64,000 nt of DNA from Selaginella moellendorffii (Eukaryota > Plantae > Lycopodiophyta): positions 838,086-902,085 of the forward strand of contig NW_003314325.1 of NCBI RefSeq assembly GCF_000143415.4, in the 5' to 3' direction. Positions within the stretch are counted from its first letter, which is position 1. Each line of letters opens with the position of its first letter. Below are positions 928 to 20,506 of this stretch, piece after piece. Both the position numbers and the translations under genes were made by a program. The notes beneath the pieces are model-generated. The model saw only the letters and a program-made list of their open reading frames with translations, was not told where the DNA came from and made no database searches.

Positions 928-1224
928 GGCTTGACATCTACTGTTTGAGTTAAAAAGTGTTGTTTTTTATTTTGGTAAGTCTCGCACTGACCATTCTCTC
1001 GAACCAACCTTCCACCACTGCCGTCCAGGCGATCGCATCACGCCCTGGAAGAGGCTTGGAGGAGCCTCTTAATCCTATCCAAGAGAAACTTTGGATTTTC
1101 AAGATGGTTTCTAGTGTCGTCCAAAAGATCTCGTTGCGGTGAGACATCTTTTTGAAGAGATCATTCGCGTCATATGCGCCGCCACCACGTCTTTCTTTGG
1201 GAGCTTCTCAAAGCCTCTAAAACG

Positions 1225-1372
1225 TCGATACCTCTTTTTGGCAAGCCATGCTACAGTTAATCGAGCCATGGGATTTTGGGAGGCTCTAGCGTTTCAATCA
1301 AGACAGGGATAACGCAAAGAGCTGCGTCGTCAAAGATATGGCGATTGGCTCTCTTTGGAAGACTCTGCTGCT
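1225..1372 (+). pseudogene. Degraded inverted relic of the last exon of the MBL-fold gene
   Basis: Reads QLIEPWDFGRL*..QDRDNAKSCVV..QRYGDWLSLEDSAA versus QLIEPWDFERLYGAFQDREIEENAKSCVV..QRYTDWLSLDDDAA at 4414-4560 (-). Confidence 0.75.
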
Positions 1373-1699: not shown

Positions 1700-2670
1700 C
1701 AAGAACAGCGTCTTCCTGCGAAATCTCCTCGTCCAGATGTATGGCCGCTGCGGCTGCCTGGAGAAAGCGCGATCGGTCTTCGATTCTACCTATCTCTTCT
1801 CTTGGAAGCAGGCGGTCCTGGGCGGCAAGAGATTGTGTCCAGCAACGCCATGATCTCGGCATACGCCGCGGCCGGGGACTCTTCGATCGCATCCCTGCCA
1901 AGAATTCCATCACCTGGAACGCGATGACCGAGATGTGCTCGCAGAGTGGCAATCTCGGCGAGGCGGAGGCGGCATAGCAAACCCTCGTGCCATGATCGTG
2001 GCATATGCCCATAACCGGCATCACTCACGCGCGCGTCGATTCCCTGGCCCAAAAGGACGTGCTGGCGTGGACGGCCATGATCTAAGGCCACTGCCAGAAT
2101 CAGCGGCTAGATGAAGCTAAAGCTCTTAGATAGAATGCGCACAAAGAATGTAGTAACATGGACGGCCATGATCACAGCATATGCCCAGGAAGGGCATATG
2201 GAGAAAGCAAAGAGTCTCTTTGAAAATGCCCCGGAACTTAATGAGGTGGAATTTACGGCTATGATCGACGGCTACGCATCTAATGGCGGCGTAGAAGAGG
2301 CTAAATGTGTTTTTGAGAGGCTGCCAGAAAAAGACGTGGTGGCTTGGAACTCCATGCTTTGTGCATATGCCGAGAATGGGCATTTGGACGAGGCACTAGA
2401 TTCCTTCCAAAAGATGGCTCACCGCAACGAGATCCCTTGGGCGACAATGATCTGCTCGTCTCTAGAAACCATCTTGAAAATGCATAGTTTATTTTTGATC
2501 AAATGCCTTACAATAGCAAGATGGCAAGTGCAGCACTCTTCTTGGCCGAAGAGCTCATCCACAGCATGAGTGTTGCTTGGGTCTTGCTACTGGCTGCTTG
2601 CCAGAAGATCCACAAAGATCCCAAATGTGGAGCTCCAGTTGCTGATAGACTCTCGGCATTGGGTTTGGCA
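1700..2670 (+). pseudogene. PLS-type PPR pseudogene (frameshifted, with E-domain-like remnant)
   Basis: Motifs LFDRIPAKNSITWNAM, NVVTWTAMITAYAQEGHMEKAKSLF, DVVAWNSMLCAYAENGHLDEAL, AWVLLLAACQKIH in different frames with stops. Confidence 0.8.
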
Positions 2671-2790
2671 CCATGGTTGAATTTCTATGGCCAGAATTAT
2701 GGTCTATTTACTAAAGTGTATTAACTTGATTTATAAAGATTATTTATGATTAAGCTTAAGCTTGCATTCTTTCTATATTTTTTTAGAGCA

Positions 2791-4215
2791 ATGAAGAGGA
2801 TGTGGGAGTATGAGGAGTGGAGTTTTGCAACACTTGACATCACCACCAAAACAAAGAACAAAAAGGTAAAGGTGACACACAATTCTTTGCTGTTACTACC
2901 AACTTTGGAGGAGAAATCCATGCTTGTGCTAGATATGGATGAAACACTAATTCATGCCCACAAGGCTACAGCATCCCTCAAGCTCCTCAGTGGGAAAATT
3001 ATTCTATTGAAGCGCTATGTTGTGGCAAACAGGCCAATCATGGATACATTTCTAAATGAGATGAGTAAGATATATGAGATTGTGATTTTTACTCGAGCGG
3101 TGAAGCCATATGTGGACAAGATCTTAGATAGGCTCAACCCAACTGGGAATCTTTTTGTCCATCACTTCTATAGAGATTCGTGCTCAACTAAGGTAAATCA
3201 CAATTATTTTCTTTCCAATTTACTAGTTTACCTCGTATATCCAAACACCATGGCCTTGGCCTTAGTTAAATTCCCTTGCTAAAGTTTTTGCTTATTGTAC
3301 TAATTTCTACTTTGTCCTACTTGGTTTCAGCAACTCACTTCACAAACAACAGAGCATTAACCATCCATTAACAGATTCCCAAATTTTCTTTTAATCCCCC
3401 TCCCTGAGTTAAATTGAACTTAAGGTCCCCACATGCACAAGTAGCTAAACACACTAAACCTCTAAGTTTTTAACATCTTTTGGTATAACAAAACTTGATC
3501 ATAGGACTTTTTAAAATCCCAAGCTTTGGGTACAACACTTGTTTTGGGGCACCAAGGGAAAACACTATGGTATAATAGCTCAGTATAAATGCCTTTACTC
3601 CCCCACTTCCATCCTGAAGGGAAAGCTTAAGCCTTTAAGAAGGGGCAAGGACTAATGAACTATAAAGTATTTAAGTGGGGCACCACTCCATATAAGCAAA
3701 GAGCACTATAGTTGGACCTGACCTCGGACTCTATCTTAGGCTCGATTTCAAACTTGATCTTGGATCTTAGACTTGGTCTCAGACCTGATCTTGGATCTTA
3801 GGCTCAGTTTCGAACTCAATTTTAAAGTCAATTTTGGACTTGATATTGGACTTTGTCTCGAACTTGGTTTCGGAGTCAATCTTGGACTTGATATTAGACT
3901 TGGTTTTGAACTCAGTCTCAGAGTCAGTTTCAAACTCAATCTCAAACTCGGTCTCATCCAATAAATTCTTTATCATTTTAGTTGTGCTTTTGGGGATTCT
4001 TTAGCTTATAACACCTTAGGGAGTTGATTCTTTACGATTCCACTAGAAAGGTTGTGAAAAATCTTTCAAGATTAAAGTGGGACCTCAGACACATGGTGAT
4101 TATGGATGATAAGCCAAAGTCTGAAATTGTCATCCATGCATTAAAAAATAGAAAAGGGCATAAATATGATGAATTGAAGATCTACATAAGAAAATTGCAA
4201 GAGTTGAAAATGTAA
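2791..4215 (+). pseudogene. SCP1/NIF (FCP1-like HAD) phosphatase pseudogene split by an approximately 850-bp insertion
   Basis: LVLDMDETLIH (DxDxT), RP..DTFLNEMSKIYEIVIFT..KPYVDKILDRL..YRDSC (to about 3192), resuming at about 4045 as KVVKNLSRLKWDLRHMVIMDDKP. Confidence 0.75.
3712..3957. repeat. Degenerate 6/12-nt periodic tandem repeat inside the phosphatase insertion
   Basis: Recurrent CTTGGACTTGAT/CTTGGATCTTAG/CTCAGTTTCGAA units; explains the low-complexity ORFs on both strands. Confidence 0.7.
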
Positions 4216-4413
4216 GACAACCATTGAAGAAGCTAAAAGGTTAGACAAAAGATCTTATAAAAAAAACTCATGTATCCATTGCATATGCTGTAACGCTAAA
4301 TTGATTGTGGCATTGTTTCCCTCGCGAAAACAAATGTCCAATTTAAACTTTGGAAACAATGTCATGGCAAATCATAATCAGAAAAGCATCTCGAGTTTCA
4401 GTCTGATTAATAC

Positions 4414-5473
4414 TTAAGCAGCATCATCATCCAAAGATAGCCAATCAGTATACCTTTGCAGAGAGAATACGACGCAGCTCTTTGCATTTTCTTCAATCTC
4501 TCTGTCCTGAAATGCACCGTAGAGCCTCTCAAAATCCCATGGCTCGATTAACTGGCCTATCCTTTTAGCGTGGCTCGACGAGAGTGGTATATAGTTTGGG
4601 TACGATCTCATTATGCTCACTGTTTTGTTGTCCATCCCCACCTACAAATCAAACATGGAGTGAGGAAAAAAAACGAAAACAAAGTTTGTAAACAAGAGAA
4701 GTTTATACCTGTAAGATATCTCCAGTGAATAAAACACCCCTCCCCTGCGCTCCATGAGACCAGTGGAGGATTTGAGCACCAGCAAAATGGCCACCTAAAT
4801 GTAAAAGCGTGACTCCCTCCCATAGCTGGAATGTTTTGCCCTTCCAGAACTTTACGTTTTCGTGCTGGTAAACCACCCATTTCTTATCCCTGCCATAGTA
4901 TCAATACAGAGAAATCGAAATGAAAGAGAGAAACAAAGGTAGACAATACCATTCGTGGATATAAACCGGGACACCTCCAAAAGCCTCGCTCCATCGAGAG
5001 TTTGTGCTGTAGTAATGCGGGTGAGAGATGGCAATCGCTCTCAATCCACCTAGCGACTTGATTATCTCCACTGTGGCATCGTCTAGAAATGAGATGCAGT
5101 CCCACAGTATGTTTCCCTCTATCAAAAACATAAAAACCATAAAAAATGCACAACGGCCATAGCTCCAAACATACCTTGAGTCTGGATGAGAAACGCACGC
5201 TGTCCAATGCCAAACTTTGGAAAGGTTATGATCTCGAAGACCTGCGGCTCATGCTTCTTGAAACCATTGCGAAACTGCAATCTCATCTTGCTCATGGACG
5301 TCCATACCTGGCCTTCCCTAAAACTAAAAGTCAGAGGGCAAAAATCTTAGATGGGCATACCTTGGAACGAACTGGCGATCATCGGAGCAAATAATACACG
5401 ACGAAGGCGGGCCTTGGGAGGATGTTGGAGGGAACTCCACCCCACAAGTCTTTCAAATATGACCATCCGCCAT
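4414..5473 (-). CDS. Metallo-beta-lactamase-fold hydrolase with N-terminal CxxC..CxxC; 5 exons (5473-5361, 5317-5175, 5118-4950, 4889-4709, 4641-4414); single in-frame TGA at codon 7
   Basis: Spliced product MADGHI*KTCGVEFP..CIICSDDRQFVPREGQVWT..FGIGQRAFLIQTQEGNILWDC..IAISHPHYY..VYIHE..LGGHFAG..LFTGDILQV..MRSYPNYIPL..FERLYGAF; all splice sites GT-AG and in phase. Confidence 0.85.
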
Positions 5474-6484
5474 AAAATGCCTGCCCCAATTTTGTTACAA
5501 ATTACAATACTGCTAAATACCTCTAGGATTTCCGAGAAAACATCACGTATGGAGCGTGTGCCTCCATAAGTTTGAAATCCGAGAGTGTTAACAAGGATTC
5601 TCGTGGTGTCTTTGTAGAAAGCAATAACGCCGTCCATTGCTTAGAAACCTTAGGAGATAACCAAGATCCCAGTAGAAGGACAAACTTCTTAAAACTCGAG
5701 GAGAAAGATTGACAGACCTTGAGATCCTCTGGAGGTATTAGCTTGTGGATGATTTGGAGGTGGAGCAGAACCTGAGGTCAGACTTGCTTACTATCACTCG
5801 TGTGTCCAAGCCTCCTGTTTGAGCAGTGTTGGACGCTCCATTGAAGCAAGTGCATATAACACGGTTAAAGACGTTTCTTACTGGAAAGCCATCGGTATAG
5901 AGCAGCTGATTGGGGACGACTATCAGCTAGAATGCAGCGTATTTGGAGGGATCCAGTCTCTATGGCCACCTATTTTTCACTCGTTTAGTTCTCTCCAAAA
6001 TATAAATGACTTTTCTTGTGATGGTCTTAGGACAGTCGTCCGAATCGTATAGTAGATGTGCATTTCATGTAGACGATGTTTCCATAAGTATGGATAGTGT
6101 TTTCCTTTTGGAAAGTGCTGGTTTGTCCGATCATCACAACCGTGACAACATAACCGAAAACTCTTTTGGCTGTGAAACAACTGGAAAAGAAGAAACAAGA
6201 AGAGAGCAAACGGAAAAAGAGCTTACCGGATAGGATGGATCTTGCACTGCCACTGAGACGCTCAACCCAAACGTAAGCTCTGCAAACATTAGGAGATGAT
6301 ATCCTTTTGATCCATCGCCCGGAAAACGAGCCTACAGTCTCCCGGGGAAAGTTGTGTCCAGGAAGACGAGTTTGGCTCCATCGTGCATAACAGTGGACTA
6401 CATAAAGACAAGATGATAAAGCTGTCAATTCACTCGCTGAAACATACCGAGTTCCAAACCAATGAAAACACAGAAAGAAGAAGT

Positions 6485-6517
6485 ACCCACACTACGCACC
6501 CCCGACTGATGGAGTAG
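6485..6517 (+). pseudogene. Short relic of PSY-like peptide gene 3' end
   Basis: ACCCACACTACGCACCCCCG (20/20) followed by ACTGATGGA matches the NPHYAPPPLMG* end of the genes at 38572 and 62828. Confidence 0.5.
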
Positions 6518-11076: not shown

Positions 11077-11883
11077 TGTTAGAGGTAGAGATGATGTGGC
11101 AGTAGTTATGCCCACGTGGCAGTAGCTTTATGTATATGTACACAATCATATACAGTTATATATATAGAGAGTTCTTCCTCCTCGTGTGCGCGTCTCTCCG
11201 CTGCTAACATGGTATCGGAGCCTTGGGCTCCTTGATCCTGAGAATGGCGCTTGCTGGCCAGGAGGCCAGTGATGAGGAGGAGGATGAGCCTCCCAATTGC
11301 AATCCCTCTTGCAATGTTTGGGACGCTTGAGGCGTTGCACCAAGGCACCAGGCTGTGTAGAGGTGCTGAGCAACAAGCAGCAGCAAGTAGAGAACAAAGC
11401 CAGTGGGAGATTGAGAGATTTCACCAACCCACATCAAGAATTGGGTCAAGATTCAAGAACATTGCATAGCAATTCTTTGCAGGAATTTCCAGCAATTGGG
11501 AAGGATGTTTATGGAGATTCAAGTGCCTAGTCGCAGAGAAGTGGGAGCCTGGCAGTTCACGGCCAAGACCTCATGCTAGAGGCAAGATTGAAGCCATAGC
11601 AAGAAGCAAAGAGTGTGCAAGCAAGTCCAAGACCAAGAACCAAGTTTTGGGTAGTTGATTGATGAGTTTTTCATATGCTTTTCTCATCAGCTCTCCATGC
11701 TCATCATCTCAGACTAGCTAGGCACGATTCAGGCTTAGATTCAGACTGGAATCAGCCGCCTGATCGTGAGTGGGAGTGTTAGAGGTAGAGATGATGTGGC
11801 AGTAGTTATGCCCACGTGGCAGTAGCTTTATGTATATGTACACAATCATATACAGTTATATATATAGAGAGTTCTTCCTCCTC
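11077..11883 (+). mobile_element. TRIM (non-autonomous miniature LTR retrotransposon)
   Basis: 5' LTR 11077-11209 (TG..CA, 133 bp), PBS TGGTATCGGAGC 11210-11221, about 550 bp internal region without pol, PPT GAGTGGGAG 11768-11776, 3' LTR 11777-11883 identical but missing its last 26 bp; empty sites (AAGTCATATCAATC) in the paralogous units near 17681 and 53428. Confidence 0.92.
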
Positions 11884-12682
11884 ATACCAATCACTTACGT
11901 CAGAAGGAAGAACTCCTTTCTTCACTGCTGCAGGAAGAAGAGGTCATCCATTCCGAGACTAGCAAATTCTTCTGAGCTGCTAGAAGATGAGCTGAGCCTG
12001 GGCGAGACATTTTTGAACCAAGTAAGCTTGGCACTGGAGCAGCTCCAATGCCGCATTGGGACTCACATCCGATCCACACGAAATCTCTCCGCCGCAAAAA
12101 AGATAAAATATCGAACCAAAACACGATTCGAGCTGCTTGCTACTCACCAGGAGCAGCGCGCGTGAAACACTTCTTCGAGTTGCCCGTTTCGGGCAAATGC
12201 TGTTATCGTTTCAGTCCGTACCTTTCGGGCGTCAATGAAAAACCTTTTCGCCTATTCCCTCTACTCAAGCGCAAAAGTAGTTACTGACTGGTCTTGATGA
12301 AAATCCAATTGTTGCTTGAGCTTTCTCAGCTCCAGTAGACCAACCACAGAACAAATTCAAGGAGCAGCTTGAATCCGTGAGTCGCTGTCCCCTAATGGTT
12401 GCACCTTGCTGGATGGATCGTGGAAATAACTAGATCCAGAGCAATCTTTGCCACATATGTCACCAGGCTGCCCGCGGGCCGTTATGGCCCAGGAACATAA
12501 AACCATGGTTTTTCATCGTTTTGAGTTGTGGACTTGCAGATGTGAGCTTGGTGGCTGCAAAGGACGACCTCGGCTAGACAACATATTTTCTCTCATTTTT
12601 TATGTTTCTTCGTTTTCTTTTTTCTTCAGGCTCGAAAGATCAAGAAGCTCCTCCACACCAGCTAACAACGAATCAAAGATAA

Positions 12683-12746
12683 TGCGGTGAGCGTGGATCG
12701 AACACGCGGCCTTCAGATCCAGTCTGACGCTCTCCCAAACTGAGCT
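12683..12746 (-). pseudogene. tRNA-Phe pseudogene
   Basis: Matches 6675-6747 but has a 2-nt deletion in the anticodon loop and has lost the 5' acceptor strand. Confidence 0.85.
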
Positions 12747-12814
12747 TGGATGGTTTTAGACAATAACTTCAATATGATTAAGTTAAAATGTAAAAGCTTA
12801 CCTCTACAATGAGA

Positions 12815-13430
12815 GTTTGGGGGCTCCGGCGATCTCGATCAAACCACTACAGCGGCTACTCTATAGATTCCTCTTCAATCTCCTCATCCCAGTCGCTTAT
12901 AATAAGTTTATTACTGTCTATCAAATGCCGGAAATGAGTAAAATCACTTGGACCGGACTAATTGCAGCATTTGCCCAAAACGGGCATCTAGGGGAATCCA
13001 GGCAGTGTTTGACGCGTTGTCTAAAGAGAAGTCCATAGCATCATGGACGGCGATCAGGCCTCAATGTCCCCGGATGTTGTATATGGTACGGTATCCTGGA
13101 CAGTGATCGATCCAAAACTCCTGAATCGATCAGGCCCTCAATTTCTTCCAGAAGTTCCCACAATGTATGGGCACGAGCCGGGACGGAAACCCTGTTCTTA
13201 TCTATGCGTGCTATCCTGGACCAGGCAGCAGCTCTTCCATTCGATGCCCGAGATGGATCTCATCAGCTCCACGGCGGCGTTCCAGGCATTGCGTGTTTGA
13301 TTCCATGCCCGAGCACAACGCCATGTTGTGAGGTGACGCGCTAGGCTGAGGCGAGATGGGCGATCACAAGGCAAGGGTGAGCGGCTGATCCTCGAGGAGA
13401 TTCCCTTCAACCATCGTGACCGTTCTTGAG
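12815..13430 (+). pseudogene. PPR remnant
   Basis: ITWTGLIAAFAQNGHL, LFHSMPEMDLISST fragments with multiple deletions. Confidence 0.7.
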
Positions 13431-13534
13431 AGGGGAGATTTGCGGAGCTTTAATCAAAAAGGCAATGCTCGAATATGGGTTAAATTAGAAAAGTGAGTTT
13501 GTGTGAATTACATGAACTTGGTTACTCCTTTGTT

Positions 13535-14713
13535 TCAAAGAGGACTTTCTGGTACAGTGACGACCTTGCAACCCATCTCCAGCTTCACCTTTGGTGTGAT
13601 GTACTCTCCAGCCATGATATATTCGGACATGATCTCGTAAAAGTGCTCTGTGTAGTGAATGCCATCAAAAGTGAAATACTTGCTGGGATCCTTACACACC
13701 GTGTAAGCAGCATTGGTCTGGTTCAGTGGAGCACACCCGCAAAGACCCTCACCATCACAGTTAAACTTGCCACCTCCACCGCAGCATGACTGGAGCGAGT
13801 TCGTGAAGCCAAACTCCTTCATATTCTCCAAAACATAGGTGTTTGCTGCAAACCAATCGAAATAATACACAGTGAGACCCTGGTATTTTTGCGTCAGCTC
13901 CTCCGACAGCCTCTGGATGTTGGTGTTGAGGTAAGAGATAATCTGGGCAATCTCAACAATGCAACCATCCTTGTCATAGTGGAATGTACCAGCGGGGTAC
14001 TGTTGGAAAGATTGGAGATAGTTTGGAGAGCAATCGGCACGGGGCATGTTGTAGAGCACAACATGACGAGCTCCGTGAGCATATAACTTCTGAATTCCAT
14101 CGGCCAGGCCTTGGATCACGGCCGGGATGGTGACGTTGATCACGTAGCCGCCTCCCAGTGGCAAACCAAAGTTGATATCGTCCCCTCCAATCTCGACCGA
14201 GTAGAGTGCATTCTCGTACCATGGTTTGCTCGCCTGGCGACCATATCGACCCTCGACAAACTCCTGGTGGCGCACGAAGTCGTCAACCTGGGCGGACAAG
14301 ACATGTGGGCTCGAGTATGGCTGGTTCTCGACCTTGATCACCGTGGCTCCGGCGTATCCAAAGTTGAGGCTCTCGAACTCGGTGCCATTGTACTTGAGGC
14401 TGGGAGTTCCAAGGTTGTCGAGGCGGAGCTTCTGGAGCAGGAGGTCGGGGATGACGAGCCCGTCGCAGTAGCGTCCAGTGGGCTTCCCGTAGGTGATCCC
14501 GTATGGGTACCTGCCCGATAGGGTCTTGCCGCCACCGGCTTCAATGTCGCGGTTGCCGCCATCGCTGAGAGAATCTGCAAAGGTGAAGACTGCGGTTGGA
14601 CAGATCGACGAGCTCGACTTTGGCGTTGCTGGCGTTGCTCGTGCCTGAGAAAGCAGCACAATGTTAAGCAAAAGAGCAAAGATTGCAAGAACAGTTCCAG
14701 ACCAAGAAGCCAT
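13535..14713 (-). CDS. GDSL esterase/lipase, secreted, intronless, 392 aa (copy 1)
   Basis: Signal peptide from ATG 14713; block I FADSLSDGGN, PYG.T..PTGR..DG, NFGYAGA, IGGDD, CCGGGG, FDGIHYTE; TATATAA about 40 nt upstream. Confidence 0.93.
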   Translation of the reverse strand: MASWSGTVLAIFALLLNIVLLSQARATPATPKSSSSICPTAVFTFADSLSDGGNRDIEAGGGKTLSGRYPYGITYGKPTGRYCDGLVIPDLLLQKLRLDNLGTPSLKYNGTEFESLNFGYAGATVIKVENQPYSSPHVLSAQVDDFVRHQEFVEGRYGRQASKPWYENALYSVEIGGDDINFGLPLGGGYVINVTIPAVIQGLADGIQKLYAHGARHVVLYNMPRADCSPNYLQSFQQYPAGTFHYDKDGCIVEIAQIISYLNTNIQRLSEELTQKYQGLTVYYFDWFAANTYVLENMKEFGFTNSLQSCCGGGGKFNCDGEGLCGCAPLNQTNAAYTVCKDPSKYFTFDGIHYTEHFYEIMSEYIMAGEYITPKVKLEMGCKVVTVPESPL

Positions 14714-14859
14714 CACAGCTGATGGATCTGTAGAAGTGTTGGAGGCCAAAGTTTATATAATGGATCCCAATCTCTTGAACAAGAGCTATCACATCTAAAA
14801 CTAGTTCCATATCCATATTTCGAGTTACCAAAGAGATTGAAATATCTTTAGAGAGTTTG

Positions 14860-15670
14860 GTACTCGTGGAGTTGTATGGCAAATGTGGCAGCGCCAACGA
14901 CGCTCGGGCGGAACATCTTCTCTAGGGATTTAATTCTCTTGGTGATCTTAGCCTAGTGAGGTCTTACTTGAGGCTGGAACCTTGCTTGATCGATCCTGAG
15001 TTTTGCAGATTGCGACAGACCTTCTGAGAATGTATGGATCGCTCCAGGAGGCTCGATTGGCTGGCGAGAGTCTTAAGAAGTTGGGGCAGAGAGATCTGGT
15101 GGCTTGGAATGCGATGAACGACGCTTATGCCCTATGCAAAGAAAGGCATTTGCGATTCACGAGAGGATGCTTACAAATTCACGTACACGACGCTTCTCTC
15201 CTGCTATGACAATCTGGGCGACGTAGAAAAGATCCATGCGCACCACTGCATTTGCAATGTGGAATCCAGATAAGGTGTTTGAATAGTTGGACGTGGGGCT
15301 GTGGACTGCAATCCTCCAGGACCTAAGGATCATGGAAGCCATTCAAGTGATAGAACAACAAGGTTTCTAGCGAGCAGCTTTATGCTGCCTTCTCTCCTCC
15401 AGATTGTGGAAGGTAGCAGTTGTTGATCTGCTCAGGTCTCCAAGAATCACGCACCAATCATTCAGGAATAGCTTGTCTATAGAGTGTGATTGACGTGTGA
15501 ATTGCAACTCGTTTTCTCTTCACAGATCCTTTCTGTTGTATGCCCAGTATGCGCCTCAGCCGCTCGTCAGGGTATCGTGGATGGTGGCCAATACATGTAC
15601 ACATGTAGGCCAGGAGAGTTGATCACGAATTACCAAGCACGGCCGGAGCGATGGAAAATGCGATGGCCTC
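14860..15670 (+). pseudogene. PPR remnant upstream of GDSL copy 1
   Basis: LVELYGKCGSANDAR, LLRMYGSLQEAR..QRDLVAWNAM fragments. Confidence 0.7.
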
Positions 15671-18485
15671 CAATGGTATAAAAAATCTTGGATTTAAGCA
15701 TGTCTATTCAAATTCTTCCCCTTCCATCGGTCTGCTCTACTTGTGAGCTGGAAAATCTGTTAATCCAGCCCCTGAATATTTCTGATCTCCCTTCCTGTGC
15801 CCTTTATCTATCGGTAGCTACTGCAAGATAGATCCGATGCAGGCTAGATGCCCGATACCTCGAATGAAATATCGCCATGTGTCTTGCGGTCTAGCGTCCT
15901 TGCGATCAATCTATTCTGTTCATTGCCATCGATCCTTTCTGATCAAGCCTTTTTCTTTCTGCATGGATGCGTTTTTTCTCGCTTGAGCATAGGAAAGAGT
16001 GGCGAGATTTTCATTCGAAACTTCCCGCAGCTTGATCGAATCATCAAAGACACAAGGCCATGTTTGGACTCCAGAGATCCTCTTCAAGGTGTACATGCGA
16101 TGATCGGGGAGAGAGGTTTTGTGGAGAACATATTTCTGAATGAGGAGGCTCGAGAAAGAAAATGGCAAAGATCAGGTTCTACAGGACAAAAAAGTGATCA
16201 GTGCTCGATATGATTCACATTACCCCACATGGTACATTTGTGTCATATATCTTCTTTCTGGTTTTTTAACTTGGGTGTTTTTTGGTGTAAAGTTGGTGCA
16301 ACAAACAAATTTGTGGGGAGGAACTTAGATTCTTCAAAAGGACCAAGCCAGGGGCTTTTGCAAGAAAGGTGGGAAACATTTTCTTCAATCCATCCCAGCT
16401 CTTGAGGTATCCTTCCACTATGCAAACATATCAAGCTCTGAAACCACAGGCTCCAGTCGGCCATGATCATCATGGCATCATATCTTTGTTTGAGGATAAG
16501 ATCACTGAGATGTTTGTGTGTGAGACGGATTCATACCTGCAACTTTTGCGATGGAGCAAGAAATTTCTAATGTTTGTTTATTTTGCTAGATGTCGTGAAA
16601 CAAGCGAGGCAAAGGAGGACGAGCAAGCGGTGATTGCCAGGCTGACCTGTGAATTCAGCTTAATCATGGCCATTTCTCTTTATATTTAATGTTTTTATGT
16701 TTTTATGCTTTCTCCAATGTCCTACAACTGAGGAACACACAACGATTTTGTAACCCGGCAGCTATGAAACTCCTATTCATATAAATAATGAAAGATGGAG
16801 CAGGAATCATTTTCACACCTGCCAGCAATGTCCTCTACCAAAATCCATTCTCGTCGCACCACTTACCTTTAGCTTGGTGTTGTCACAAAAGTTGAAACTG
16901 AACCAAGAACAGCGAGGAACTTACGACTGGAATCGCACTAAAACCGTGGCTGTTGTACTGAACTGCTTTGGAATTTCCTCTGGAGCGAAGATCTTTTAGT
17001 GGGGACGATGTTGCTTCGTGGACATGGTTGCTGTCCGATCATATGGTATGGTTTCCACGTTCAGTCCACAAATCAACTTGGACTACGAGCGGCAGTTTTG
17101 CAAGTCAAGGCTCGATACATCCTTCACCGCGTCTTCGACACAGCCACCAAACCAGTCTACCGGATAGATTGGCACGCTCAAGCCGATTTCTCCCCAACCT
17201 TTCTTACAAATGGGATAAGGTAAGGAGTCCGTGGTGATATACCAAAAACAATCTTTTTTGTAGATCCTGCTGCAAATGCCGATATAGTAGCGTCGTTGAT
17301 TGGTGACAATCACTTTTCCGTCTCAGAAAATTTCAGCGTATGGCAGCGAAACATCAGGAAACAGAATACTTGGAAACTTGTCACCTGCATTTCTTTTTTA
17401 AAGTTAACAGCTTTGAAGCACAACCTGGATGCACGTAGTATCCTCCTGGCATCCACATGAGCAGCGACTGCACCTTGAGCAAGCTTCCAGATCCAGCCAA
17501 GCTCGAAAACATTCGTCGCAGATGAATCACAGGTTGCCAAAACTAGTTTCTTACCATCCGCCCAGGAAAGCGCAACATCGGCCAAACGACTAGTGATGAT
17601 AACATGAGGCCGACTTGCTGTAGCACCTGGACGATTGCAGCTAGAACCCTGTTGTCAACTAGTGACATCGGGTAAAAATCAAGTCATATCAATCACTTAC
17701 GTCAGAAGGAAGAACTCCTTTCTTCACTGCTGCAGGAAGAAGAGGTCATCCATTCCGAGACTAGCAAATTCTTCTGAGCTGCTAGAAGATGAGCTGAGCC
17801 TGGGCGAGACATTTTAGAACCAAGTAAGCTTGGCACTGGAGCAGCTCCAATGCCGCATTGGGACTCACATCCGATCCGCACGAAATCTCTCCGCCGAAAA
17901 AAAGATAAAATATCGAACCAAAACACGATTCGAGCTGCTTGCTACTCACCAGGAGCAGCGCGCGTGAAACACTTCTTCGAGTTGCCCGTTTCGGGCAAGT
18001 GCTGTTATCGTTTCAGTCCGTACCTTTCGGGCGTCAATGAAAAACCTTTTCGCCTATTCCCTCTACTCAAGCGCAAAAGTAGTTACTGACTGGTCTTGAT
18101 GAAAATCCAATTGTTGCTTGAGCTTTCTCAGCTCCAGTAGACCAACCACAGAACAAATTCAAGGAGCAGCTTGAATCCGTGAGTCGCTGTCCCCTAATGG
18201 TTGCACCTTGCTGGATGGATCGTGGAAAAAACTAGATCCAGAGCAATCTTTGACACATATGTCACCAGGCTGCCTGCGGGCTCGTTATGGCCCAGGAACA
18301 TAAAACCATGGTTTCTCATCGTTTTGAGTTGTGGACTTGCATATGTGAGCTTGGTGGCTGCAAAGGACGACCTCGGCTAGACAAAATATTTTCTCTCATT
18401 TTTTATGTTTCTTCGTTTTCTTTTTTCTTCAGGCTCGAAAGATCAGGAAGCTCCTCCACACCAGCTGCCAACGAATCAAAGGTAA

Positions 18486-18549
18486 TGCGGTGAGCGTGGA
18501 TCGAACACGCGGCCTTCCGATCCAGTCTGACGCTCTCCCATACTGAGCT
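18486..18549 (-). pseudogene. tRNA-Phe pseudogene
   Basis: Same anticodon-loop deletion as 12683-12746 plus substitutions. Confidence 0.85.
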
Positions 18550-19327
18550 TGGATGGTTTTAGACAATAACTTCAATACGATAAGCTTACCTCTACAATGA
18601 GAGTTTGGGGACTCCGGCGATCTCGATCAAACCACTACAGCGGCTACTCTATAAATTCCTCTTCAATATCCTCATCCCAGTCGCGTAGAATAAGTTTATT
18701 ACTGTCTATCAAATGCGGAAATGAGTAAAATCACTTGGACCGGACTGATTGCAGCATTTGCCCAAAACGGGCATCTAGGAGAAACCAGGCAAAGAGAAGT
18801 CCATAGCATCATGGACGGCGATCAGGCCTCAATGTCCCCGGATGTTGTATATGGTACGGTATCCTGGACAGTGATCGATCCAAAACTCCTGAATCGATCA
18901 GGCCCTCAATTTCTTCCAGAAGTTCCCACAATGTATGGGCACGAGCCGGGACGGAAACCCTGTTCTTATCTCTGCGTGCTATCCTGGACCAGGCAACAGC
19001 TCTTCGATTCGATGCCCGAGATGGATCTCATCAGCTCCACGGCGGCGTTCCAGGCATTGCGTGTTTGATTTCATGCCCGAGCACAACGCCATGTTGTGGG
19101 GATCACTGGAGGTGACGCGCTAGGCTGAGGCGAGATGGGCGATCACAAGGCAAGGGTGAGCGGGCTGATCCTCGAGGAGATTCCCTTCAACCATCGTGAC
19201 CGTTCTTGAGAGGGGAGATTTGCGGAGCTTGTTCCGATTTACGTAATCAAAAAGGCAATGCTCGAATATGGGTTAAATTAGAAAAGTGAGTTTGTGTGAA
19301 TTACATGAACTTGGTTACTCCTTTGTT

Positions 19328-20506
19328 TCAAAGAGGACTTTCTGGTACAGTGACGACCTTGCAACCCATTTCCAGCTTCACCTTTGGTGTGATGTACTCT
19401 CCAGCCATGATATATTCGGACATGATCTCGTAAAAGTGCTCTGTGTAGTGAATGCCATCAAAAGTGAAATACTTGCTGGGATCCTTACACACCGTGTAAA
19501 CAGCATTGGTCTGGTTCAGTGGAGCACACCCGCAAAGACCCTCACCATCACAGTTAAACTTGCCACCTCCACCGCAGCACGACTGGAGCGAGTTCGTGAA
19601 GCCAAACTCCTTCATATTCTCCAAAACATAGGTGTTTGCTGCAAACCAATCGAAATAATACACAGTGAGACCCTGGTATTTTTGCGTCAGCTCCTCCGAC
19701 AGCCTCTGGATGTTGGTGTTGAGGTAAGAGATAATCTGGGCAATCTCAACAATGCAACCATCCTTGTCATAGTGGAATGTACCAGCGGGGTACTGTTGGA
19801 AAGATTGGAGATAGTTTGGAGAGCAATCGGCACGGGGCATGTTGTAGAGCACAACATGACGAGCTCCGTGAGCATATAACTTCTGAATTCCATCGGCCAG
19901 GCCTTGGATCACGGCCGGGATGGTGACGTTGATCACGTAGCCGCCTCCCAGTGGCAAACCAAAGTTGATATCGTCCCCTCCAATCTCGACCGAGTAGAGT
20001 GCATTCTCGTACCATGGTTTGCTCGCCTGGCGACCATATCGACCCTCGACAAACTCCTGGTGGCGCACGAAGTCGTCAACCTGGGCGGACAAGACATGTG
20101 GGCTCGAGTATGGCTGGTTCTCGACCTTGATCACCGTGGCTCCGGCGTATCCAAAGTTGAGGCTCTCGAACTCGGTGCCATTGTACTTGAGGCTGGGAGT
20201 TCCAAGGTTGTCGAGGCGGAGCTTCTGGAGCAGGAGGTCGGGGATGACGAGCCCGTCGCAGTAGCGTCCAGTGGGCTTCCCGTAGGTGATCCCGTATGGG
20301 TACCTGCCCGATAGGGTCTTGCCGCCACCGGCTTCAATGTCGCGGTTGCCGCCATCGCTGAGAGAATCTGCAAAGGTGAAGACTGCGGTTGGACAGATCG
20401 ACGAGCTCGACTTTGGCGTTGCTGGCGTTGCTCGTGCCTGAGAAAGCAGCACAATATTAAGCAAAAGACCAAAGATTACAAGAACAGTTCCAGACCAAGA
20501 AGCCAT
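19328..20506 (-). CDS. GDSL esterase/lipase, intronless (copy 2)
   Basis: Near-identical to copy 1; open frame with all catalytic motifs. Confidence 0.93.
   Translation of the reverse strand: MASWSGTVLVIFGLLLNIVLLSQARATPATPKSSSSICPTAVFTFADSLSDGGNRDIEAGGGKTLSGRYPYGITYGKPTGRYCDGLVIPDLLLQKLRLDNLGTPSLKYNGTEFESLNFGYAGATVIKVENQPYSSPHVLSAQVDDFVRHQEFVEGRYGRQASKPWYENALYSVEIGGDDINFGLPLGGGYVINVTIPAVIQGLADGIQKLYAHGARHVVLYNMPRADCSPNYLQSFQQYPAGTFHYDKDGCIVEIAQIISYLNTNIQRLSEELTQKYQGLTVYYFDWFAANTYVLENMKEFGFTNSLQSCCGGGGKFNCDGEGLCGCAPLNQTNAVYTVCKDPSKYFTFDGIHYTEHFYEIMSEYIMAGEYITPKVKLEMGCKVVTVPESPL

What the first reader, a model, noticed from the sequence alone, without database searches (positions are those of the whole stretch)
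5361..5473. Otherwise pristine MBL-fold gene with an in-frame TGA exactly at the first Cys of CxxC (I-*-K-T-C-G)
Seen: codon 7 (5455-5453) is TGA in MADGHI*KTCG; the remaining sequence, including CIIC.DDRQ, SHPHYY, GGHF, TGD and all eight splice sites, is intact with no other lesion, in a neighbourhood where dead genes are riddled with deletions. From family knowledge, homologs begin I-C-x-T-C-G. Established: TGA aligned to Cys in a UxxC motif is the hallmark of selenoproteins; green algae have Sec machinery but land plants are considered to lack it. Inference: a recent TGC/TGT to TGA null allele or sequencing error is most parsimonious, but Sec/Cys read-through or a relic of recoding would be remarkable.
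Basis: partly seen in the sequence, partly recalled or inferred. Interest (0 to 1): 0.75.

Follow-up and report, generated by a model that had tools for sequence, protein, structure and literature searches.

The report
Nonsense allele of spikemoss hydrolase gene
One copy of a spikemoss (Selaginella moellendorffii) metal-hydrolase gene carries a recent single-base stop mutation where a zinc-binding cysteine should be, while its partner copy on the other haplotype is intact, so this is an ordinary broken allele and not a sign of selenocysteine use in a land plant.

Summary
On the minus strand, 5473-4414 is a five-exon, 277-codon gene, and codon 7 (5455-5453) is TGA. All eight splice sites are canonical and there is no other lesion. 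The window is S. moellendorffii scaffold GL377629.1, and the gene is RefSeq LOC9648744.

The TGA is derived and private to this copy:
- The collinear partner locus LOC9640785 on GL377635.1 has TGT at this codon and encodes an intact 277-aa protein starting MADGHICKTCG. It is most likely the other haplotype (dS 0.041).
- Two older dead paralogs also have TGT.
- All 20 aligned full-length homologs have Cys here. They come from bacteria, Sec-competent zygnematophyte algae, liverworts, a moss and another lycophyte.

This Cys is one of four invariant Cys (7, 10, 26, 29) arranged like a zinc ribbon, not a redox CxxC pair.

An Rfam scan and a rough descriptor found no SECIS in about 1 kb of 3' sequence. 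Published surveys report that embryophytes lack the whole Sec machinery.

Since the two copies split, they evolved under constraint (dN/dS 0.19; no coding indels against four in the introns). This explains why the gene looks pristine: the stop is young.

Verdict: a recent null allele, or less likely a base-call error. The Sec or recoding reading is rejected as far as computation allows. Interest is low.

The parts
5453..5455 (-). In-frame TGA, codon 7. The derived base is A at 5453; the ancestral base is T, giving TGT (Cys). This corresponds to GL377629.1 positions 843538-843540.
   Evidence: TGT is found at the homologous codon in L002 (10019-10021), L001 and L004.
5361..5473 (-). Exon 1. ATG at 5473-5471. 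It encodes the four-Cys motif: C7 is replaced by the stop, C10 is at 5446-5444, C26 at 5398-5396 and C29 at 5389-5387. The donor GT is at 5360-5359.
5175..5317 (-). Exon 2. It contains the next in-frame ATG (Met46, 5295-5293), which RefSeq isoform X2 uses as its start. An alternative acceptor 5 nt into the exon is used by RefSeq isoform X1.
4950..5118 (-). Exon 3. It holds a degenerate MBL motif 2 (S-H-P-H-Y-Y).
4709..4889 (-). Exon 4. It holds the GGHF and TGD motifs.
4414..4641 (-). Exon 5, with the TAA stop at 4416-4414.
3400..4413 (-). 3' flank and UTR. No SECIS-like element was found.
   Evidence: Rfam E-value mode, 2500-6500: only two weak matches (E 3.2 and 6.5), neither a SECIS family. 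(rough SECIS descriptor, 0 candidates).

Best explanation
The window carries one allele (RefSeq LOC9648744, scaffold GL377629.1) of a Selaginella moellendorffii nuclear gene. The gene encodes a 277-aa metallo-beta-lactamase-fold protein with an N-terminal four-cysteine zinc-ribbon-like knuckle. A single T-to-A transversion at 5453 turned codon 7 from TGT (Cys, the first of the four) into TGA. Translation from the normal ATG therefore stops after six residues. The partner locus on the other assembled haplotype (LOC9640785, GL377635.1) is intact, so the sequenced plant is effectively heterozygous for a null allele. The mutation is young relative to the split of the two haplotypes, which is why the rest of the gene shows no decay. 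Shown here: the stop, its derived state, the intact partner, the invariance of the Cys, the absence of a SECIS, and purifying selection on the pair. Inferred: that the two loci are alleles and not very recent duplicates, that the mRNA terminates at codon 7, and that any protein started further downstream is non-functional.
For: Identity of the locus: window 3414-6382 is identical to GL377629.1:841499-844467.

The partner locus: L002 is collinear with the window over more than 20 kb, at about 97.7% substitution identity. It has TGT at the codon, and that is the only difference in exon 1. RefSeq X1 of the partner (P0171) begins MADGHICKTCG.

Other copies: dead paralogs L001 and L004 also have TGT.

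Conservation: all four Cys are invariant in 20 homologs, including Mesotaenium, Spirogloea, Marchantia, Riccia, Ceratodon, Diphasiastrum and bacteria.

Divergence of the pair: dS 0.041, dN 0.0078, dN/dS 0.19, binomial p 0.0055. There are 0 indels in 834 coding nt against 4 indel events in 226 intron nt. The dS is close to the published residual heterozygosity of the assembly (about 98.5% identity, Ks about 0.056) and below the 0.12 duplication peak (PMC7801247).

Sec signals: no SECIS was found. Embryophytes are reported to lack the Sec machinery and tRNA-Sec (PMC6627142; PMC13578239).

Polarised changes: six clearly derived changes fall on the window copy and one on the partner.
Against: No reads or transcripts could be examined, so a base-call error cannot be excluded, and termination at codon 7 has not been observed. 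RefSeq still models the locus as protein-coding, with N-terminally truncated or alternative-frame isoforms (P0172, P0167), so a shortened product is not formally excluded. Flank identity (about 97.7%) is a little below the published 98.5%. Several sites show paralog-like mixed states, so a very recent segmental duplicate with gene conversion remains possible instead of a strict allele. The 6-versus-1 excess of derived changes is not statistically significant.
Confidence: 0.8

Rival explanations
1. Sequencing or assembly error: the true base at 5453 is T, and both haplotypes encode Cys7.
For: It is a single-base difference in an exon that is otherwise identical to the partner. The assembly is a Sanger-era draft that split into two haplotypes (PMC7801247), so each haplotype has lower depth.
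Against: The same allele carries at least five other private derived substitutions, so real divergence exists here. A random consensus error that happens to make a stop at this exact base is a priori rare.
Confidence: 0.1
2. The allele is still useful. Ribosomes that terminate after the 6-codon mini-ORF re-initiate at Met46, or use the alternative-frame ATG together with the alternative acceptor, and make an MBL domain without the zinc ribbon that keeps some function.
For: RefSeq models exactly such products (P0167, 232 aa from Met46; P0172, 245 aa). The intact locus also has an alternative-acceptor isoform (P0159). There are no further lesions in the gene.
Against: The missing 45 residues contain eleven of the family's invariant positions (C7, C10, G11, P23, C26, C29, R33, Q34, G40, Q41, W43). 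Every complete homolog keeps this segment. Out-of-frame ATGs lie between the stop and Met46. The lack of further decay is explained equally well by the youth of the mutation.
Confidence: 0.06
3. Recoding: the UGA is decoded, either as selenocysteine or by programmed or near-cognate read-through, and gives a full-length protein.
For: The UGA aligns exactly with a conserved Cys. UGA is the leakiest stop codon, and tRNA-Cys and tRNA-Trp can read it in yeast and human cells (PMC6614816; PMC10573299).
Against: No SECIS was found. Embryophytes are reported to lack the whole Sec machinery. The partner haplotype and the paralogs have TGT, so the codon is neither fixed nor old. No homolog shows anything but Cys, even in Sec-competent zygnematophytes. 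The residue sits in a four-Cys arrangement that looks like a structural zinc site, not a redox site. The context is UGA-A, which in yeast is read mainly by tRNA-Trp, not tRNA-Cys, so basal leak would mostly not restore the ligand.
Confidence: 0.01
4. The partner is not an allele but a very recent segmental duplicate, and the window copy is a young paralog beginning to decay into a pseudogene, like its older relatives.
For: The family has at least four other dead copies with conserved flanks (L001, L004, L005, L002B). The window differs from L002 by a tandem duplication of several kb. Mixed ancestral states at six sites suggest gene conversion among copies.
Against: The dS of 0.041 matches haplotype-level divergence, not the Ks 0.12 duplication peak. 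There is long collinearity with the same neighbouring genes.
Confidence: 0.15

Closest known systems
Heterozygous premature-termination (null) allele, or young unitary pseudogene
   Same: A single derived nonsense substitution in an otherwise intact, recently constrained gene, with an intact counterpart on the homologous haplotype.
   Different: Nothing of note. The only peculiarity is that the stop falls on a conserved Cys codon. TGT and TGC are each one transversion away from TGA, so this is an expected route to a stop.
Eukaryotic selenoprotein genes (in-frame UGA plus a 3'-UTR SECIS)
   Same: An in-frame UGA aligned to Cys in homologs, inside a UxxC-like string.
   Different: There is no SECIS. 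No Sec machinery is reported in embryophytes. The UGA is private to one allele. No Sec-containing homolog exists. The Cys belongs to a four-Cys arrangement typical of a structural zinc site, not a catalytic redox site.
Metallo-beta-lactamase fold superfamily (Pfam PF00753), an uncharacterised subfamily with an N-terminal zinc ribbon, annotated as 'glyoxylase-like metal-dependent hydrolase'
   Same: The intact allele scores above the Pfam cut-off (26.3 against 22.7 bits). Its AF2 model (pLDDT 91.4) matches MBL-fold structures; the top hit is 2p97, a putative metal-dependent hydrolase from Anabaena.
   Different: The canonical HxHxDH motif is reduced to H-x-H-Y-Y. There is an extra N-terminal CxxC...CxxC module of about 45 residues. 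No characterised member or solved structure is close in sequence.

Membership tests
Eukaryotic selenoprotein gene | In-frame UGA at a position occupied by Cys (or Sec) in homologs | tested here: met
   the TGA aligns with invariant C7.
Eukaryotic selenoprotein gene | SECIS element in the 3' UTR | tested here: not met
   the Rfam E-value scan of 2500-6500 gave no SECIS family at E<=10; the rough SECIS descriptor found 0 candidates in about 1 kb downstream. SECISearch3 itself was not available.
Eukaryotic selenoprotein gene | Sec machinery in the genome (tRNA-Sec, eEFSec, SBP2, PSTK, SepSecS, SPS2) | not testable with these tools
   The whole genome could not be searched here. The literature reports that embryophytes lack the entire machinery (PMC6627142; PMC13578239). 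Selaginella is not named in the main text of either paper.
Eukaryotic selenoprotein gene | UGA fixed in the species and shared with orthologs, or Sec forms present in relatives | tested here: not met
   the partner haplotype and two paralogs have TGT; all orthologs have Cys, including those from Sec-competent Mesotaenium and Spirogloea.
Metallo-beta-lactamase fold (PF00753) | Profile match above the curated cut-off | tested here: met
   the intact allele P0171 scores 26.3 bits against a 22.7 cut-off. Single window exons alone gave no hit.
Metallo-beta-lactamase fold (PF00753) | Alpha-beta/beta-alpha sandwich fold | tested here: met
   AF2 pLDDT 91.4. Foldseek against PDB gave MBL-fold proteins in nearly all listed hits (best E 2.5e-9, probability 1.00).
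Metallo-beta-lactamase fold (PF00753) | Canonical HxHxDH metal motif | tested here: not met
   the motif is S-H-P-H-[YF]-[YFL]. H118 and H120 are invariant, but the D-H pair is replaced by aromatic residues. H140, H176 and D199 are invariant.
Zinc-ribbon / rubredoxin-like knuckle | Two CxxC pairs separated by about 15 residues | tested here: not met
   In the window allele the first Cys is a stop. The motif is complete in the partner allele and in all homologs. There is a weak sub-threshold match of a bacterial homolog to PF21349, a rubredoxin-like domain. Metal binding itself was not testable.
Haplotype-specific null allele | A disabling lesion is derived, and an intact collinear counterpart exists at allelic divergence | tested here: met
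   Allelic versus recently duplicated status is inferred from dS 0.041 against the published Ks of about 0.056.

The most novel reading that the evidence does not exclude
The UGA at the zinc-ligand codon is decoded at a useful rate in a land plant, as Sec by some cryptic mechanism or as Cys/Trp by near-cognate tRNAs, so that the allele is leaky and not null.
Probability: 0.01. Interest if true: 0.85.

Novelty: already known. Interest (0 to 1): 0.08.

Why it matters
It matters mainly as a negative result: a tempting 'TGA at Cys in a UxxC' signal in a land plant turns out to be an ordinary heterozygous nonsense allele. It shows that in the two-haplotype S. moellendorffii assembly, any lone in-frame stop should first be compared with the partner scaffold. 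It also documents that this MBL-plus-zinc-ribbon gene belongs to a small family in Selaginella with several dead copies, and that one haplotype has just lost a further copy.

Tried and rejected
- Pfam on single exons gave no hits. PDB sequence searches with exons 3 and 4 and with the intact allele gave only chance AmpC matches.
- A second copy inside the window was sought by tblastn. Only a weak exon-5-like fragment at 1146-1367 was found.
- Exact-protein look-ups of P0159, P0170, P0171, P0167 and P0140 found nothing on record. This left no independent assemblies or transcript contigs to confirm the A at 5453 or expression.
- RNA editing was considered and rejected. Plant organellar editing is C/U only, the gene is nuclear with spliceosomal introns, and restoring Cys would need A to U or C.
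- A variant genetic code (UGA = Cys or Trp) was rejected, because the partner allele and neighbouring genes use the standard code.
- Words about selenoproteins gave nothing in the scan's earlier notes.
Exons were searched one by one by reference. The full-length analyses used the public intact-allele protein P0171 that a tool returned.
- dN/dS was computed exon by exon, skipping the codons split by introns.

Full report
OBSERVATION

The minus strand of window 5473-5361 reads MADGHI*KTCGVEFPPTSSQGPPSSCIICSDDRQFVP, with TGA at 5455-5453. Reading on, the gene has five exons: 5473-5361, 5317-5175, 5118-4950, 4889-4709 and 4641-4414. All four introns are short and GT..AG. Apart from codon 7, the 277 codons are open.

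IDENTITY OF THE LOCUS

I confirmed it: a locus fetched from GCA_000143415.2, GL377629.1:841499-844467, is base-for-base identical to window 3414-6382. The window is therefore GL377629.1:838086-902085, and the TGA is in the public assembly.

RefSeq calls the gene LOC9648744 and models around the stop. Isoform X2 (232 aa) starts at Met46. Isoform X1 (245 aa) starts at an out-of-frame ATG and uses an acceptor 5 nt inside exon 2. The JGI model is marked partial.

HOW THE SEARCHES WERE DONE

Because of the stop and the introns, I searched exons separately by reference and never joined them. Single exons gave nothing in Pfam or the PDB. That left the protein open, so I spent the exhaustive HMMER search on exon 4. 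It found 458 relatives. These included a 95%-identical Selaginella fragment model (P0001) and full-length proteins of about 275-285 aa. A word search seeded with P0001 then recovered the other Selaginella copies.

THE PARTNER LOCUS

LOC9640785 on GL377635.1 encodes a 277-aa protein, P0171, that begins MADGHICKTCG. Its genomic locus, L002, is collinear with the window over more than 20 kb at about 97.7% substitution identity. The window carries one tandem duplication that L002 lacks.

Within the gene, the two copies differ at 13 of 834 coding positions:
- 1 nonsense change (window A5453 against T, i.e. TGA against TGT), which is the only difference in exon 1
- 5 amino-acid changes
- 7 synonymous changes

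The introns differ by 3 mismatches and 4 indel events in 226 nt.

Nei-Gojobori counts, summed exon by exon, give dS 0.041, dN 0.0078 and dN/dS 0.19. The binomial p for a deficit of replacements is 0.0055. There are no coding indels, where about 7 would be expected at the intron rate if one lineage were unconstrained.

The dS fits the residual heterozygosity reported for this two-haplotype assembly (212.6 Mb holding two haplotypes of about 106 Mb, about 98.5% identity, Ks about 0.056). It does not fit the Ks 0.12 duplication peak (PMC7801247). I therefore take L002 to be the other haplotype, with a very recent duplicate as the alternative.

POLARITY

Two older, clearly dead paralogs retain exon 1: L001 on GL377612.1 (about 80% nucleotide identity, with deletions) and L004 on GL377619.1 (deletions and stops). 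Both have TGT at the homologous codon. With L002, that makes three of three comparators with TGT. The window's TGA is therefore derived and private. Using the paralogs as outgroups, six clearly derived changes fall on the window copy and one on the partner. This is suggestive but not significant.

WHAT THE RESIDUE IS

A word search with the intact allele found 5370 relatives. Orthologs occur in:
- Diphasiastrum (68% identity)
- Marchantia, Riccia and Calypogeia
- Ceratodon
- the zygnematophyte algae Mesotaenium and Spirogloea
- many bacteria (about 52% identity)

In an alignment of 20 of these sequences, C7, C10, C26 and C29 are invariant. So are G11, R33, Q34, G40, Q41 and W43. All 17 fetched homologs with a complete N-terminus carry CxxC[GA]...CxxC. 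The arrangement is that of a zinc ribbon or rubredoxin-like knuckle. One bacterial member gives a weak sub-threshold hit to a rubredoxin-like Pfam domain. It is not a redox CxxC pair.

The body of the protein has the MBL fold. Pfam PF00753 scores 26.3 bits against a 22.7 cut-off. The AlphaFold model has pLDDT 91.4. Foldseek matches MBL-fold structures, with 2p97 as the top hit. The metal motif is degenerate (H-x-H-Y-Y). No characterised relative was found.

THE SELENOCYSTEINE READING

A eukaryotic Sec codon needs a 3'-UTR SECIS and the Sec machinery. An Rfam E-value scan of 2500-6500 returned no SECIS family at E<=10. A rough SECIS descriptor found nothing in about 1 kb downstream of the stop. 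Published genome and transcriptome surveys report that embryophytes lack the entire machinery and tRNA-Sec (PMC6627142; PMC13578239). I could not search the whole Selaginella genome myself.

The orthologs in Sec-competent zygnematophytes have Cys, so there is no Sec ancestor to be a relic of. The codon is polymorphic or private, not fixed.

Basal read-through cannot be excluded. However, the context is UGA-A, which in yeast is read mainly by tRNA-Trp and not tRNA-Cys (PMC6614816). Trp would not restore a zinc ligand.

MECHANISM AND CONSEQUENCE (INFERRED)

Translation from the authentic ATG ends after six residues. Re-initiation at Met46 would have to pass out-of-frame ATGs. It would also yield a protein lacking 45 residues that contain eleven invariant positions. 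The allele is therefore most likely null, while the partner allele supplies the function.

The gene looks pristine because the mutation is young. The pair shows purifying selection over most of its divergence, and at about 1.5% divergence fewer than one or two further lesions would be expected anyway.

VERDICT

This is an ordinary, recent nonsense allele on one haplotype of an annotated gene, or less likely a base-call error. Recoding is not supported. Interest is low.

Such cases appear to be a regular feature of this assembly.

Noticed in passing
L001 (GL377612.1), L004 (GL377619.1), L005 (GL377629.1, about 806 kb, some 30 kb before the window), L002:19688-20618: S. moellendorffii holds at least four further copies of this MBL/zinc-ribbon gene. 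All are dead (in-frame stops, deletions, frameshifts). They share upstream sequence, and in L001 and L002 the downstream flank as well (including PPR-like ORFs), so the duplication unit is larger than the gene. Several are annotated as 'hypothetical proteins' built from alternative frames.
   Followed up: partly
window 1146-1367 (+): A fragment resembling exon 5 of the same gene lies in inverted orientation (35% aa identity over 77 residues, E 1.8e-7). It matches the arrangement in L002, where a second, inverted copy lies about 9 kb downstream.
   Followed up: no
window 11882-16181 and 16712-20000: Both stretches align to the same part of the partner locus (L002 1-5329, a region with a GDSL lipase gene). 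The window haplotype therefore carries a tandem duplication of about 4 kb that the other haplotype lacks.
   Followed up: no
window 5313-5317 and 5464-5466 (-): RefSeq isoforms at both loci use an out-of-frame ATG 7 nt after the main ATG, or a later ATG in that same frame, together with an acceptor 5 nt inside exon 2 that restores the frame. The result replaces the zinc ribbon with an unrelated peptide. Whether this comes from a real minor splice form or is a gene-prediction artefact is unknown.
   Followed up: no
protein family (alignment A2): The family is found in zygnematophyte algae, liverworts, mosses and lycophytes. No seed-plant protein appeared among the best 120 hits. It is about 52% identical to thousands of bacterial proteins. 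This pattern is compatible with an ancient bacterial origin in streptophytes. The function is unknown, and the HxHxDH motif is reduced to H-x-H-Y-Y.
   Followed up: no
window 3748-3976 (both strands): A low-complexity, imperfectly repeated stretch gives long ORFs rich in K/S/E/T/F on both strands (for example KSKI/ETEF-like units), just downstream of the gene.
   Followed up: no
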